The position numbers and the translations under genes are program-made. DNA of 62,862 bases, filler included, from Klebsormidium nitens (Eukaryota; Plantae; Klebsormidiophyceae): NCBI GenBank assembly GCA_000708835.1. It is 7 parts of 7 records of this genome, joined end to end, with 100 filler letters (N's around TTAATTAATTAA, not from the genome) between each part and the next. Parts side by side here need not be neighbours in the genome. Positions count along the whole stretch, not along the records: positions 60,307 to 62,862 come from DF238727.1; 6 more parts are not named here. One strand, given 5' to 3'. The first letter of the stretch is position 1, and the number at the start of each line of letters is the position of its first letter. The notes below the pieces were generated by a model. It was not told the origin of the DNA, made no database searches, and saw only the letters and a program-made list of their open reading frames with translations. Below, piece by piece: positions 11,429 to 62,862 of the stretch.

Positions 11429-14400
11429 ATGGCTCCGTTTTTGGAGGAGTCGCAGGCAGGATCGGCCCTGCGGTTCAAGGTTTCATACCGGGGAAAGCTG
11501 CAAGAGCTACACAGAGAACCTTCCGAGATGCTGGCTGGACTAGCCCACCACTTAGGCGAGGTTACTGGTGCCAATCCAGATACAATCAAGCTGATTCTAC
11601 CAAGGAGCAGGAGAGGGGTTCCTGGAAAACCTGCACCCCCTGCCCTGCAACCCTTGAGTGATGAGTGGAGGGGCTTGACACTGGCGGAGGCTGGCATTAC
11701 TCAGGTTAGCATCTGAAATTGATAACTCCGTAAAGTTGCAGCTGGAGAATCTAGGAGAAGTATTGCAGGTCTTCTTTGGCGTGCTCTCGATAGACGGCTT
11801 GTGACACGGCGCTTGAATCCTTGGTGTTATGCACAACATTTTGCAATCTTCAGAACAATGGTGAAGGCCATGTGAGAAATTCTGCAAAAAGCAAGGAGCC
11901 TGTCATCAGCAGAAGTCTGGTTTTTAAACCGTTTGGCACCGGATCAGAAGTTTCACAGCGTTGCCCTGAGGTGTCACTTCTCTGCCTGTGACCATATTGA
12001 CGCTCTGCCTCTTGAAACATACAAGATCCTTGTTAAACCCCTATATTCGTCGTGTTGCCACCATGACAAGTTTCTACTGCCCCCATTCCTTTTAGTAGCT
12101 CGTCTAGCCCAGAACAAAGAGTGGAGAAGGCTGCATTGAAGAACTCTCACTTCATGGAGCCCCATGCTGAGCAATTGAACTTCTGTATCACAGGACATGA
12201 CCATCCTCATGTCTGGAGCTTCCACCACCGAAGTGGCGGCTGTGAGCAAGACCTCTGCGGCGGGCATCGCTGACTTTGAGTATGAGGAGAAAAGGGCACG
12301 CATGCGCGCGCGCAGGAAACGCGCTCCCCTGGCCCTGCCCACTGGGCCGTATGTGTTTGCGGATTTCAGGACCCTGCAATTGCCTGGCATCTTGGTAAGG
12401 AACCAAGCCCCATGTCTCTGCTGGTGCATGTGCTTGCAACGTGGCACAACCTTGTGTGAGGGTATGTGAGTTTCCATCAAAGTTCTGAGGAGGCTCTTGC
12501 CAAGCAAATCCTGTATGCTCTTTGCCCTTAGCCAATCCTTCCGTTCACCTTTCTGTCGCCTCCCGCGCCCTTGCATATGGTTTGCAGCAGACTTGAGGGT
12601 TGCTAACAATTGCTGTGGTTTTGCAGCTGCATCCGCCAGAGACCAAGGCACTGAAGCTCATGCACAAGCTGGCCAGCGATCCCGGTGTCGTTGCCATAAT
12701 GAACAAGGTGAGCCTACGATCTTGCTAAGAGCCTCAACGACTTGCAATTAACCTATAGTTTCGTCCCTACTTATGCTTGTGACAAGTCTTAGAGAACGCA
12801 GGGTGTTGACCAATATCTCTCTTTGGCTTTGACTTGATAACCGCTTGTTCTGCAGAGACTCAAACGTTCATGGGTGATCTAGAGTCAGCCCTTGAGTTGG
12901 CCGTGCCGATGTGAGTTGTGGATACCAGAACGTTTCGGTTCCATGTTCCTTTCTGATGCCGAGTTCCGCAGCTCGAGAAATTGGTTCGTCCGTTCTGACA
13001 ACCGGTTCTTTGTGGTCCGCAGTACAAGTGGCGCGTGGGCATTATGACCGAGCTGGCCCCCGAGGGCTACGTCGGGGTGAGCCCCGTGTGCCTCCTGGGC
13101 TTCAACCGTAACCGCGGCGCCGAGATCTCGCTCCGCCTGCGCACCGACGACCTCGCCGGGTTCCGCAAGTATGACAGCATCCGGAAGACGCTGCTCCACG
13201 AGCTGACGCACATGGTGCATGATGACCACGACGAGCACTTCAAGGCGCTGAACAGTCTGCTCAACAAGCAAGCAGAGGAACTAGATTGGACGCGGAAGCG
13301 GGCGCACACCCTGGGGGGCAAGGCGGCTACTGAGAGCGATGAGGACGAGTCGGAGAGCAGTGACGAGGAAGTGGGGCGGGTTCTCGGAGGGGGGGGGCAG
13401 AATACACTGGTGATGGACCCCCGGGCAGCAGCAGCTGCTGCAGCGATGAGGCGGGATGCTGAGAAGAGGAGGCGGGAGGCGGAAGGGCAGCCGACTGCTG
13501 ACGTGGCGGATGATGTCATTATGGACGATCCAAGCGTGGGGAGAAGCGGGCTGCCAAGTTCTCCGCTAGTAGGGGGAGTCTCAGGAACGATTGTGGATGT
13601 CGGCAGGGAGAGCTCGTCGGAGGTGGAAATAACTGAAGGAACGACGGGGACAGGCGCGTCACGGGGGGCGCAGGAGAAAGGCCACATCGACGAAAAGGAT
13701 GTGAAAGAAGGGCAGCAGAATGATGATAGCGCTCGGGAAGGTGCAGCGAGGGGGTGCCGACAGTCGAGCGGATGCAAGAGGAGCCGAGCACTGGAGGCGG
13801 GGAGCAGACAAGTGAAACGGGAATCACGGAAGGTGCCTCCATCGGGGCTGCGGGCTCAGTTTCTGAAAGCGGGGATATTCAGCTGCAGAAAGGGGATGAG
13901 GTCACGCCTTCGAGAAGAGAACCCGACCCAGACGATCCTGACGATACCCTTCTGGAACTCAGGCACGATCAGGACGTAGCAAAGAAGCAAGCCGAATTAA
14001 CGTCTCAGCTGAATCGAATGGAAGAAGAGGAAACGGACGGGAGCGAACCGATGACTGTGGACGCACCACTTGCGGCGCCGGCGCCGGGGCCCAGTGAGCA
14101 GGTGCCACGTGGCAGCGACGACGCGGCAGCTGGCGGTTTGGAATGGCAGCGGGCTCAGGAAGCTGCGGCGGAGGCGAGCGGGCGGGTGCAGAAAGCGGTG
14201 GCGGATTTGAGGCAACAGGCCGGACCGGGGGAGGTTACGCTAACCCTGAAAACGCTGGCAACGATTCTTCGCAATGTGATGGAGCACCCGGCCGAGGCGA
14301 AGTACCGGCGGGTGCGCAAGACGAATGCGGCGTTCTTCGAGAGGGTCGGCAGGTTCCAAGGTGAGCTCGGAGGGGCGTACTGTGGTAGGGTTTTCGGATT

Positions 14401-60306: not shown

Positions 60307-60927
60307 CCATCGTGACGCGATTGTCATTCGCACCTGCACTGGAGCTCTGACTGAGAAACTCGACCAGACCAAAGAGCCAGTCAACTTCGTGCTAAACCCA
60401 GGGACCGCCGATGAACTTACCGTCAGAGCGCACGTGGTGATTGTCAACCAAAACGTGCCTGACACTTTGATTGGCATGAGTGTCATGGGACCAGCTGAGC
60501 TCACGCCTGACATGCGCAAGAAACGCGTCAAATACTACGTCGAGGATGACCAGATTACGCGCAAGTCCTTCTTGCCGTGCAAGTTTCCCATCGACTACGC
60601 CAGGTCGCCACTGCAGGCGTACCAGGCGCTTAACGCTTACACGGGATTCATCGTTCCCGTTGTAAAGAGCCCGCGCAATGCGGAGGATGTCGCAGTGACG
60701 CGCGCGCGCCTTGCTGACCATCAGACGAAGCTGCTCCCTGAGATGACTGAAATCTTCGATCGCAGCATTCGGGCCCTGGCTACACCAGAACGAAAGCCGC
60801 CTGTGATTAGCGACCCAGCTTACCGGCACTTGAAGCCGTTAAACACGTCGTTCGTCGACAAGAAAGACGTGCTGGCCACACCTGGCCCAGGCATGGTGGT
60901 CAGCCAAGAGGTTGCCCACTTCGTGCA
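60307..60927 (+). mobile_element. Retroelement polyprotein fragment (aspartic-protease-like region), DNMT-less copy
   Basis: Open frame containing VIVNQNVPDTLIG, which resembles the C-terminal DxLIG part of retropepsins. It is paralogous to 61250-61683 with mostly synonymous differences, then jumps to VSQEVAHFV, matching 62724 onward. Confidence 0.6.
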
Positions 60928-61249
60928 NNNNNNNNNNNNNNNNNNNNNNNNNNNNNNNNNNNNNNNNNNNNNNNNNNNNNNNNNNNNNNNNNNNNNNNNN
61001 NNNNNNNNNNNNNNNNNNNNNNNNNNNNNNNNNNNNNNNNNNNNNNNNNNNNNNNNNNNNNNNNNNNNNNNNNNNNNNNNNNNNNNNNNNNNNNNNNNNN
61101 NNNNNNNNNNNNNNNNNNNNNNNNNNNNNNNNNNNNNNNNNNNNNNNNNNNNNNNNNNNNNNNNNNNNNNNNNNNNNNNNNNNNNNNNNNNNNNNNNNNN
61201 NNNNNNNNNNNNNNNNNNNNNNNNNNNNNNNNNNNNNNNNNNNNNNNNN

Positions 61250-62675
61250 CACTCTGATCGGTATGAGTGTCATAGGACCGGCCGAGCTCACTCCCGATAT
61301 GCGCAAGAAACGCGTCAAATACTACATCGAGGAGGACCAGACGGTGCGCAAGTGCTTCTTGCCGTGCCAGTTTCCCATCGACTATGCCAGGTCGCCGCTG
61401 CAGGCATACCAGGCACTTAACGCTTACACGGGATTCATCGTACCCGTTGTAAAGAGCCCGCGCAATGCGGAGGACGTCGCAGTGGCGCTTGCGCGCCTTG
61501 CTGACCATCAGACAAAGCTGCTAACTGAGATTACTGAGATCTTTGACCGCAGCATTCGGGCACTGGCTATTCCAGAACGAAAGCCGCCCGTGATCAGCAA
61601 CCCAGCTTACCGGCACTTGAAGCCGTTGAACACGTCATTCGTTGACAAGAAGGACGTGCTGGCCACACCTGGCCCAGGCATCGTAGTCGTTGAGTTGTTT
61701 TCTGGCCTCATGGCCACTACCGAGGCGTTGCTTCGGCAGGGAGTTACCGTCAGAAAGGTGTATGCCTGCGAGATTGACGCCAAGACCCGCAAAATCGCTG
61801 CTAAGCGTCTGGCCGTCTTGCACACCTTATTCCCACAGCTCCTGAGCGCAGACGCTATTAGAGACTGTCATGACCACTTGGGAGACGACGTCAGCAAAAT
61901 CAACAGAGGCCACATGGCCCAGCTGGAACGTCCTGACCTTGTGGTGGCCGGATTCCCGTGTCAGGGATTCTCACGAGCCGCAGAGTACGCCCTAGGCTTG
62001 CGCGATTCGCGAACCAGGCTCTTCGACGATGCCATCCGAATCGTGCACCTCATCAACAACATTTGGGGCGGCTCTGTGGGCTACCTGTTTGAAAACGTTG
62101 ACGCCAGCGATCACCCGCAGGCAGACGTACGGGCAGAGTTTAACACCGTGGTGAAGGGAGTGCTCGGACACGGCTTCGCATTTGATGCCGTGGCCGTTGG
62201 CTCTTACGCGCATCGCCAGCGCCATTGGTGGACCAACCTGGCCCCAAGCGCCCTCATGTGCGAAATGGTTGAGAAGAAGTTCAAGCACCGCAAGCCGGAT
62301 CAGATTGTCCAGAACATTCTGCAACACGGCCACCGGGCTCAGAACGCTCAGCACGCCCGCGCACCTGGAAAGGTCTCGGTCAACGTGCGCGGCCAGCCGC
62401 TTCGCGCTCTGTCCACGTTTGTCACGGTGCGCGGCTCTCACGCCTATCACCCTGGACAGCAGAGCATGATCCAGCAAGCCAACGGATTCTGGGATGAGCC
62501 TACGGCTCTGGAGCGCGAGCGCGCTCTGGGATTCATGGACGATACCACAAAGGTTTGCCCCTCTATTTCAGAGGCTGACCGCAGAAGAATCCTGGGAAGC
62601 ACCATGGACATGCACGCCCTGCAGTTCATCATTGGCAGCATCCAGTGCTTCCAGTTCGCCTTTTTCACCGATTGA
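61250..62675 (+). CDS. Retrotransposon-encoded DNMT3-like C5 cytosine methyltransferase fused behind a protease-like region
   Basis: Motif I VELFSG, II ACEID, IV VAGFPCQ, VI LFENV, VIII RQRHWWTN and C-terminal ERERALGF...LG.TM. Intronless, with the 5' end in a gap. The frame stays open after the single TGA to the window end. Confidence 0.88.
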
Positions 62676-62681
62676 CAATTA
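62673..62681 (+). promoter_or_regulatory. Stop-codon readthrough signal TGA-CAA-TTA
   Basis: The stop is followed exactly by CAR-YYA (CAA TTA), and the same frame continues for ~62 codons (QLARRNAP...PGMVTSQEVAQFVQ...) to the window end. Confidence 0.7.
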
Positions 62682-62862
62682 GCCCGGCGCAACGCTCCAG
62701 TCCAGGAGAGTTGTGACCGGATACCTGGCATGGTGACCAGCCAAGAGGTTGCCCAGTTCGTGCAGAGCGGACTTCTGCGCTGCCGCACCCTTCGCTCCCA
62801 GCCACAGGACCCCAGCACCGTGTTGGGACAGCCACCTGAGCTGGGGGGGGGGGGAAGTCAGG

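What the first reader, a model, noticed from the sequence alone, without database searches (positions are those of the whole stretch)
60307..62770. Side-by-side DNMT-plus and DNMT-minus element copies define a precise 1050-bp in-frame methyltransferase cassette
Seen: copy 1 reads ...ATPGPGMV-VSQEVAHFV (60875-60927). Copy 2 reads ...ATPGPGIV-[DNMT, stop, linker]-RIPGMV-TSQEVAQFV. The cassette is bounded by near-direct repeats CCAGGCATCGT (61674) and CCTGGCATGGT (62724), exactly 1050 bp (350 codons) apart. Removing it deletes both the DNMT and the leaky stop and fuses the protease region to downstream pol in frame. The shared parts differ mostly at synonymous sites, so copy 1 is not a simple assembly duplicate. 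Inference: either microhomology-mediated loss of the DNMT, giving a 'cheater' lineage, or a snapshot of the pre-capture state showing the insertion point.
Basis: partly seen in the sequence, partly recalled or inferred. Interest (0 to 1): 0.8.

Follow-up and report, generated by a model that had tools for sequence, protein, structure and literature searches.

The report
Methyltransferase-less deletion copy of algal retrotransposon
Two diverged fragments of a known Klebsormidium-type Gypsy retrotransposon that carries a DNA methyltransferase lie on one scaffold; one has lost the methyltransferase and the stop codon behind it through a single in-frame deletion, which is ordinary decay, not a snapshot of the state before capture.

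Summary
The piece is two contigs joined by 322 N. Contig A (copy 1) and the left of contig B (copy 2) share 435 nt at 89.7% identity, mostly synonymous changes. Copy 1 then continues with what in copy 2 follows the methyltransferase (DNMT) and its stop, exactly 1050 bp further on and in frame.

The element belongs to the published KnitGypsy-Dnmt3 family of Klebsormidium: Gag, protease, linker, Dnmt3-like DNMT, conserved UGA, then RT/RNase H/integrase in the same frame.

Every detectable relative of the shared region, down to about 26% identity, carries the DNMT. Copy 1 nests beside DNMT-plus copies and keeps the first residues of the DNMT fold. On each side of its junction it is identical to the two DNMT boundaries of a DNMT-plus relative (L001). 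So it is a secondary deletion at a short chance repeat, and the pre-capture reading is rejected.

No second copy with this junction was found, so a 'cheater' lineage is unsupported. The two contigs overlap in homology and are not collinear, so adjacency across the gap is unproven. Contig A ends just past the junction, so a chimeric read cannot be excluded.

By-product: the UGA after the DNMT is ancient and sits in known leaky-stop contexts.

The parts
60307..60927 (+). Contig A = copy 1. Fragment of the element's polyprotein gene: C-terminal half of the aspartic protease, the roughly 135-aa linker, and the first codons of the region that in relatives follows the DNMT stop. Broken once, by one in-frame deletion that removes the DNMT and the ORF1 stop. 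No stops or frameshifts within the fragment.
   Evidence: Open frame. 89.7% identical to copy 2 and 92% to L001. Protease assignment comes from relatives P0016, P0075 and P0084. Copy-1-specific changes are 11 synonymous to 3 non-synonymous, P = 2.7e-5 against neutrality.
60928..61249 (.). Assembly gap, 322 N of estimated length. It joins two contig ends that are homologous to each other rather than consecutive.
   Evidence: ORFs drawn across it are artefacts.
61250..61679 (+). Copy 2: the last roughly 12 codons of the protease, followed by the linker. The linker has no Pfam family. Its last roughly 75 residues are modelled with high confidence. In every relative checked that extends past it, the linker is followed by the DNMT.
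61680..62672 (+). Copy 2: intact Dnmt3-like C5 cytosine methyltransferase domain, the C-terminal domain of ORF1.
   Evidence: PF00145 at 37.5 bits. Best PDB sequence matches are DNMT3C/3A, E about 3e-5. Fold match to DNMT3A/3B/3C catalytic domains, E 1e-12, target TM 0.72-0.76. dN/dS is 0.05 against L001. The catalytic motif columns are nearly invariant in 38 relatives.
62673..62681 (+). Conserved ORF1 stop (UGA) with its two downstream codons. This is the natural end of ORF1, not a break, and a candidate programmed read-through site.
   Evidence: The same stop and the same six following bases occur in L001. A UGA at the homologous place occurs in L002, L003 and L004. About 25 of 77 protein clusters end at this position. 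The contexts match published leaky motifs (PMC3159437).
62676..62862 (+). Copy 2: in-frame coding region after the stop, the N-terminal pre-RT part of Pol. It is cut off by the end of the piece, just after a run of G.
   Evidence: Open frame. The peptide is conserved in frame directly after the stop in K. nitens L002: 58% identity over 59 aa, E 5e-15. In L004 the in-frame continuation carries RVT_1, RNase H and integrase.

Best explanation
The scaffold holds two fragments of different copies (about 10% diverged) of a DNMT-carrying Ty3/Gypsy retrotransposon of the KnitGypsy-Dnmt3 family, from a Klebsormidium-like streptophyte alga.

The family's plan is shown by relatives. ORF1 is Gag (zinc knuckle), aspartic protease, linker and a Dnmt3-like methyltransferase, ending in a conserved UGA. 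Pol (RT, RNase H, integrase) follows in the same frame and is, by inference, made by stop-codon read-through.

Copy 2 shows this plan intact over the part present. Copy 1 descends from a DNMT-plus element close to L001. It has lost, in one event, 1050 bp that hold nearly all of the DNMT, the ORF1 stop and the first codons behind it. The loss occurred by recombination between two short, imperfect, same-frame direct repeats. The likely mechanism (inferred) is either template switching by reverse transcriptase during copying or microhomology-mediated repair of the integrated DNA. The result fuses protease-linker to Pol without DNMT or stop.

It is a deletion derivative, not an ancestral form. Whether it is a single dead copy or has spread is unknown, and its position next to copy 2 is unproven.
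For: Family and host. Best hits are Klebsormidium nitens proteins (84% identity) and an ENA contig (99% identical DNMT protein). The family is described in PMC5890265.

Architecture. L004 and P0084 show the zinc knuckle, protease, DNMT, then an in-frame ORF with RT, RNase H and integrase. L002 shows the same order.

Loss rather than absence.
- All relatives of the shared region that extend past it run into DNMT motif I, down to about 26% identity.
- An exhaustive profile search of 1.84 billion representatives gave only 37 hits and no DNMT-less relative. The two long non-DNMT hits are spurious.
- In an NJ tree, copy 1 is sister to L001, then copy 2, deep inside DNMT-plus elements.
- dS in the shared region: copy 1 to L001 is 0.197, less than copy 2 to L001 at 0.266.
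- Copy 1 keeps the first three residues of the Pfam DNMT model, which are the first half of the first strand of the fold.
- The stretch of copy 1 around the junction is 27/27 and 26/26 identical to the left and right DNMT boundaries of L001, with no filler.
- L001 carries a 12-nt repeat with one mismatch at spacing 1050.
- The right-hand repeat is missing from the K. nitens copies.

Other decayed copies carry other internal DNMT deletions (P0041, P0082, P0012), so such losses recur in this family.
Against: Contig A ends 26 nt past the junction, at an assembly gap, so the junction may rest on few reads. No raw reads could be examined.

No second sequence with this junction exists in the protein collections or in the JGI metagenome contigs. 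Those collections do not appear to hold this organism, since the window's own proteins are not in them.

Only 9 codons are visible past the junction, so the in-frame fusion to Pol is seen only at its very beginning.

The copies are mosaic. Copy 2 against L001 drops from 11.3% to 4.2% divergence close to the DNMT start. The sister relation of copy 1 and L001 therefore holds only for the shared region.
Confidence: 0.7

Rival explanations
1. The junction is not genomic. It could be a chimeric read or contig tip, for example from template switching during library or whole-genome amplification, joining the left and right DNMT boundaries of one L001-like DNMT-plus copy at their microhomology.
For: The junction lies 26 nt from a contig end that abuts an N gap. 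Each side is 100% identical to the boundaries of a DNMT-plus relative. No other occurrence was found. The scaffold order is not collinear with the element.
Against: The exact shared stretch is only 9 nt (12 nt with one mismatch). That is too short to mis-join contigs in k-mer or overlap assemblers, so actual reads must carry the junction. A contig that stops a k-mer length past a unique junction is also what a real junction entering a repeated sequence would produce (inference).
Confidence: 0.2
2. Copy 1 belongs to an established DNMT-less sublineage that has multiplied after the deletion, using proteins of DNMT-plus elements or its own fused polyprotein.
For: Copy-1-specific substitutions are strongly biased towards synonymous sites (11:3, P = 2.7e-5). 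Its frame is open throughout. So it left an active lineage recently.
Against: That bias is equally expected if the deletion arose in the very last copying event. No second copy with the junction was found. The deletion also removes the conserved ORF1 stop, which would abolish the presumed Gag-to-Pol dosage control.
Confidence: 0.08
3. Copy 1 shows the ancestral, pre-capture element, and the repeats mark where the DNMT was inserted.
Against: The DNMT is present in all relatives, far more diverged than copy 1 is from copy 2. Copy 1 retains DNMT residues. The right repeat is lineage-specific. The repeat is within chance expectation. The ORF1 stop at the DNMT's end is ancient.
Confidence: 0.02
4. 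The 1050 bp are an intron of the element's RNA, and copy 1 is a reverse-transcribed spliced RNA.
For: A K. nitens gene model (P0012) splices across the stop. Spliced retroelement RNAs exist (general knowledge).
Against: In neither register allowed by the junction does the missing segment have GT...AG ends (read). The P0012 model is an automatic annotation.
Confidence: 0.01

Closest known systems
KnitGypsy-Dnmt3, the DNMT3-carrying LTR Gypsy retrotransposon of Klebsormidium nitens (de Mendoza et al. 2018, PMC5890265)
   Same: The nearest named relatives are K. nitens proteins, at 84% (DNMT) and 80% (protease part) identity. Both have an intronless Dnmt3-type DNMT with unrearranged motifs inside a Gypsy-type polyprotein. 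The DNMT is under strong purifying selection, 0.05 here against below 0.2 in the paper.
   Different: The window is not the annotated NIES-2285 copy set, since the best K. nitens identity is 84%. A 92-94% identical contig comes from an ENA metagenome. The sections of the paper that I read place the DNMT 'into the Pol polyprotein ORF'. Here and in 4 relatives the DNMT is the last domain of ORF1, ahead of a conserved UGA. Those sections do not mention a copy that has cleanly lost the DNMT and the stop.
SymbioLINE-Dnmt / SymbioDIRS-Dnmt3 of Symbiodinium (same paper)
   Same: These are retrotransposons with a captured DNMT, co-existing with copies whose DNMT is mutated or absent.
   Different: They are different element classes with an independent capture. 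There, DNMT-less LINE and DIRS elements are read as ancestral forms. Here no DNMT-less relative was found and the one DNMT-less copy is derived.
Programmed stop-codon read-through sites of types I and II (Beier and Grimm classes, as reviewed in PMC3159437), and the UGA between gag and pol in the retrotransposon Tca2 (PMC2194720)
   Same: An in-frame UGA separates the upstream polyprotein from Pol. The codons after it are of the published leaky kinds: CAA-UUA in the window and L001, a near-match in L004, and CGG in L002 and L003.
   Different: Read-through has not been shown here. A 3' stem is only weakly indicated (z = -2.0; a 6-bp consensus stem from 5 sequences). The protease and a methyltransferase lie upstream of the stop.
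Internally deleted, non-autonomous derivatives of LTR retrotransposons arising at short direct repeats
   Same: One copy of a short repeat is left at the junction, there is no filler, and the parent-like sequence is known.
   Different: The deletion happens to be in frame and removes exactly one accessory domain plus the recoding stop. That gives it the look of a module boundary.

Membership tests
KnitGypsy-Dnmt3 family (DNMT-bearing Ty3/Gypsy element of Klebsormidium) | Dnmt3-type C5-methyltransferase domain with motifs in the ordinary, unrearranged order | tested here: met
   PF00145 at 37.5 bits. Best PDB matches are DNMT3C/3A. Fold match to DNMT3A/3B/3C, E 1e-12. Motif I, IV and VI columns are nearly invariant.
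KnitGypsy-Dnmt3 family (DNMT-bearing Ty3/Gypsy element of Klebsormidium) | DNMT embedded in the element's coding region between protease and RT, in Gypsy order PR-RT-RH-INT | tested here: met
   In the window, the protease end and linker lie upstream and an in-frame pre-RT region lies downstream. The full order is seen in relatives L004 and L002. The RT itself lies outside the piece.
KnitGypsy-Dnmt3 family (DNMT-bearing Ty3/Gypsy element of Klebsormidium) | Closest sequence relatives are the K. nitens copies | tested here: met
   KFL_017580010 at 84%, KFL_015140010 at 80%, and others.
KnitGypsy-Dnmt3 family (DNMT-bearing Ty3/Gypsy element of Klebsormidium) | Purifying selection on the DNMT between copies (Ka/Ks below 0.2) | tested here: met
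   Copy 2 against L001: 33 synonymous and 6 non-synonymous changes, dN/dS 0.05. The control frames give values above 2.
KnitGypsy-Dnmt3 family (DNMT-bearing Ty3/Gypsy element of Klebsormidium) | Terminal repeat structure (LTRs, DIRS-like arrangement) | not tested
   The piece holds no element ends. I did not analyse the ends of L002 or L004.
Programmed stop-codon read-through | In-frame stop between two coding regions, conserved among diverged relatives, with coding conservation directly after it | tested here: met
   A UGA at the same place in the window and in L001-L004. About 25 of 77 clusters end there. The post-stop peptide is conserved in frame. dN/dS after the stop is 0.31, from few changes.
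Programmed stop-codon read-through | Stop context of a known leaky type | tested here: met
   UGA followed by CAA-UUA or by CGG, compared with the motifs listed in PMC3159437.
Programmed stop-codon read-through | Conserved 3' RNA structure | tested here: inconclusive
   Single-sequence fold z = -2.0. A 6-bp consensus stem from 5 sequences has little covariation. Rfam gave no match.
Programmed stop-codon read-through | A read-through protein is actually made | not testable with these tools
   This needs ribosome profiling or proteomics.
Microhomology-mediated (or template-switch) deletion | Short direct repeat at both ends of the lost segment in a parent-like sequence, one hybrid copy at the junction, no filler | tested here: met
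   (L001 family D6, spacing 1050).
Microhomology-mediated (or template-switch) deletion | The junction is present in the genome (read support) | not testable with these tools
   No reads were available, and contig A ends just past the junction.
Retrocopy of a spliced element RNA | Canonical GT...AG ends of the missing segment | tested here: not met
   Read from the boundary alignment.

The most novel reading that the evidence does not exclude
The DNMT-less form is a real, transmissible sublineage. In that reading a one-step, in-frame loss of the DNMT and the ORF1 stop created an element that spreads without making its own methyltransferase. Together with the divergence change point near the DNMT start in DNMT-plus copies, it would mean that the DNMT's 5' boundary is a recurrent recombination point at which the DNMT module is exchanged or dropped among family members.
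Probability: 0.08. Interest if true: 0.55.

Novelty: new member of a known kind. Interest (0 to 1): 0.3.

Why it matters
The value is modest. The family is published, and internally deleted copies are the normal fate of retrotransposons.

Two things are useful. First, a natural copy lacking exactly the DNMT gives a descriptive contrast. Existing methylome and RNA-seq data could be used to compare methylation and expression of DNMT-plus and DNMT-less copies, which bears on the open question of what the element's DNMT is for.

Second, the comparison shows that in this family the DNMT is the C-terminal domain of ORF1, upstream of an ancient UGA in known leaky contexts. The DNMT would then be made in Gag-like amounts, not Pol-like amounts. 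I did not find this point in the sections of the 2018 paper that I read.

Tried and rejected
1. A scan of JGI metagenome contigs with an alignment of the shared region gave 339 pattern matches, none a relative. A scan for the back-translated junction peptide gave 0 matches.
2. A word search with copy 1's 206 aa gave 8 hits, none DNMT-less. Its length filter (113-360 aa) would miss long fused polyproteins, so I ran the exhaustive profile search. Its two long non-DNMT hits, P0107 and P0111, are a coiled-coil protein and an AAA ATPase, and are spurious.
3. Intron hypothesis: rejected, because the missing segment has no GT...AG ends.
4. Read-through-stimulating RNA structure: inconclusive. Rfam found nothing.
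5. Pfam on the window's own protease part found nothing. The protease assignment comes from relatives.
6. The viral, bacterial-genome, phage, plasmid and E. coli collections were not searched, because they are irrelevant to an algal retrotransposon.
It was repeated without that entry.
8. As required, I did not remove the DNMT segment from copy 2 to compare it with copy 1. The pieces were compared apart.

Slips, stated as required; nothing was deleted.
I noticed this at write-up, recorded it in entry 4, and do not repeat those coordinates here.
- Only the paper's statement is used.
Full report
**1. What the piece is**

Places 60307-62862 are two contigs: A (60307-60927) and B (61250-62862), joined by 322 N.

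I tested the gap first, as asked. Contig A's end is homologous to about 62764 of contig B, and contig B's start is homologous to about 60463 of contig A. The two sides are therefore overlapping homologues, two copies of one repeat family, and not successive parts of one gene. For them to be true neighbours about 322 bp apart, copy 1 would have to be cut off shortly after its junction and copy 2 would have to be 5'-truncated inside the protease.

As written, the frames are one base out of register, which is meaningless for an estimated gap. Both contig ends at the gap lie inside the repeat, and contig B starts in the most conserved protease motif. That is what repeat-induced contig breaks look like (inference). 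'Side by side' is thus unproven. The ORFs that run through the N are artefacts.

**2. The observation**

It is confirmed.
- The shared 435 nt align without indels at 89.7% identity. Of 45 differences, 33 are at third codon positions, and dN/dS is 0.14.
- Copy 1 is open throughout.
- After the shared part, copy 1 continues with the sequence that in copy 2 lies behind the methyltransferase and its stop.
- Copy 2 reads linker, DNMT, TGA, and then stays open in the same frame.

There are two corrections. The repeat is no more than chance gives: 8-10 direct-repeat families of 9 nt or more occur per 1.7 kb, and in copy 2 this one is below the detection seed. Most of the shared part is not protease but a roughly 135-aa linker with no known family.

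**3. What the element is**

The DNMT hits Pfam PF00145. The best protein relatives are Klebsormidium nitens proteins, up to 84% identity, plus a 99% identical DNMT on ENA metagenome contig L001.

This is the KnitGypsy-Dnmt3 family described by de Mendoza et al. 2018 (PMC5890265): an intronless Dnmt3-type DNMT inside an LTR Gypsy element of the charophyte K. nitens.

Relatives give the full plan.
- In K. nitens DF238327.1 (L004), ORF1 (P0084, 1160 aa) holds a zinc knuckle, an aspartic protease (residues 598-691), the linker and the DNMT (833-1160).
- After a UGA, the same frame continues with RT, RNase H and integrase.
- L002 shows the same order, with a decayed DNMT.

The solved structures closest in sequence are the DNMT3C/3A catalytic domains. 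An AlphaFold model of copy 2's ORF (pLDDT 77.7, pTM 0.79) matches DNMT3A/3B/3C catalytic domains at E 1e-12 and target TM 0.72-0.76.

**4. Gain or loss**

All evidence points to loss.
- (a) Every relative of the shared region that extends beyond it runs straight into DNMT motif I, down to about 26% identity.
- (b) An exhaustive profile search of 1.84 billion representative proteins found only 37 relatives and no DNMT-less one. The two long non-DNMT hits are spurious.
- (c) In an NJ tree of the shared 145 aa, copy 1 is sister to L001, then copy 2, and this trio is nested deep among DNMT-plus elements. dS agrees: copy 1 to L001 is 0.197, copy 2 to L001 is 0.266, and copy 1 to copy 2 is 0.353.
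- (d) Copy 1 still has the first three residues of the Pfam DNMT model, which form the first half of the first strand of the modelled fold. So the left edge of the loss lies inside the DNMT, not at a module boundary.
- (e) The stretch of copy 1 around its junction is identical, 27 of 27 and 26 of 26 bases, to the left and right DNMT boundaries of L001, with no filler. L001 has a 12-nt repeat with one mismatch at exactly that spacing.
- (f) The right-hand repeat is absent from the K. nitens copies L002 and L004. It cannot be a relic of the original capture.
- (g) The last roughly 75 residues of the linker are modelled confidently next to the DNMT, and the linker is found only in DNMT-bearing proteins.

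Other decayed copies carry different internal DNMT deletions (P0041, P0082, P0012). Loss of DNMT sequence recurs in this family; this case is simply complete and in frame.

**5. How the deletion arose (inferred)**

It arose by recombination between two short same-frame direct repeats. This happened either by reverse transcriptase switching template during copying or by microhomology-mediated repair in the host genome. The sequence cannot tell the two apart.

It is in frame because both repeats encode the same short peptide in the same frame. It is not an intron, because the missing segment lacks GT...AG ends in either possible register.

**6. Is there a DNMT-less lineage?**

Changes specific to copy 1 are 11 synonymous to 3 non-synonymous (P = 2.7e-5 against neutrality). 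So copy 1 left an actively selected lineage recently. That would be equally true if the deletion happened in the last copying event.

No other sequence with the junction was found. However, the public collections searched do not seem to contain this organism. The deletion also removes the ORF1 stop. The 'cheater' idea is therefore open and unsupported.

**7. The stop**

The UGA behind the DNMT is conserved in the window, L001, L002, L003 and L004. About 25 of 77 protein clusters of the family end at the homologous position. The peptide directly after it is conserved in frame between the window and K. nitens, at 58% over 59 aa.

The downstream codons are CAA-UUA (window, L001), CAA-UUC (L004) or CGG (L002, L003). 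PMC3159437 lists stop-CAR-YYA, UGA-CGG and UGA-CUA as the classic leaky contexts. A 3' stem is only weakly indicated.

I infer that Pol is made by read-through, and that the DNMT is therefore produced with Gag and protease in the larger amount. This is inference, not shown.

**8. Breaks, counted without places**

- Within the piece, copy 2 has none.
- Copy 1 has one in-frame deletion and no stops or frameshifts.
- L001: ORF1 upstream of the DNMT has at least one frameshift and one premature stop. Its DNMT ORF is intact.
- L002: the DNMT is internally disrupted.
- L003: at least one extra stop lies behind the ORF1 stop.

**9. Verdict**

This is a real and correctly described sequence relation in a known family. 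The 'cheater' reading and the adjacency of the two copies are untested. A chimeric read remains possible, at about 0.2. Novelty: a new member, and a decay form, of a known kind.

**10. Slips, stated as required**

A short read-through motif was recalled from memory in my reasoning before I found it in a paper. The report does not repeat those places and uses only the paper's wording.

Noticed in passing
window 61250-62862 against L001:3319-4931: Divergence between copy 2 and L001 drops from 11.3% to 4.2% at a change point close to the start of the DNMT (max chi-square 25.5). Third-position differences fall from about 19% to about 9%. This suggests mosaic ancestry, meaning recombination between family members near the DNMT's 5' boundary, or an unusual constraint on synonymous sites in the DNMT.
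   Followed up: partly
L001:966-4744: In this ENA metagenome contig the Gag-protease-linker reading frame is broken by at least one frameshift and one premature stop, and its own-branch changes look neutral (4 synonymous to 10 non-synonymous). The DNMT ORF, however, is intact, starts at its own ATG, and is 99% identical in protein to copy 2 (dN/dS 0.05). The DNMT may be under selection independently of the rest of the element, or the contig may be a recent recombinant.
   Followed up: partly
window 61450-61679 (copy 2), with the homologous part of copy 1 inside 60307-60927: The linker between protease and DNMT has no Pfam family. Its last roughly 75 residues (a 34-residue helix plus a structured segment) are modelled with pLDDT 83-93. 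The linker occurs only in proteins that also carry the DNMT, so it is possibly an N-terminal extension of the methyltransferase module.
   Followed up: partly
window 62673-62681; L002:13669-13677; L003 about 11717-11725; L004:4894-4902: The ORF1 stop is always UGA followed by C. The next codons fall into the two published leaky-stop classes in different sublineages, a switch between contexts with the stop retained.
   Followed up: yes
window 62846-62856: A run of about ten G lies a few bases before the end of the piece. L001 aligns through it without a gap, so it is part of the element, though it probably contributed to the contig break.
   Followed up: no
P0012 (KFL_000540020) and the L002/L004 gene models: The automatic K. 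nitens gene models put introns into these intronless element genes. One model splices across the ORF1 stop to join DNMT and RT. The models are annotation artefacts and should not be read as evidence of splicing.
   Followed up: partly
L003:2483-6460: In a JGI metagenome contig, a 1325-aa TIR plus TPR (NLR-like) gene lies about 2.6 kb upstream of a family member. It is unrelated to the finding.
   Followed up: no
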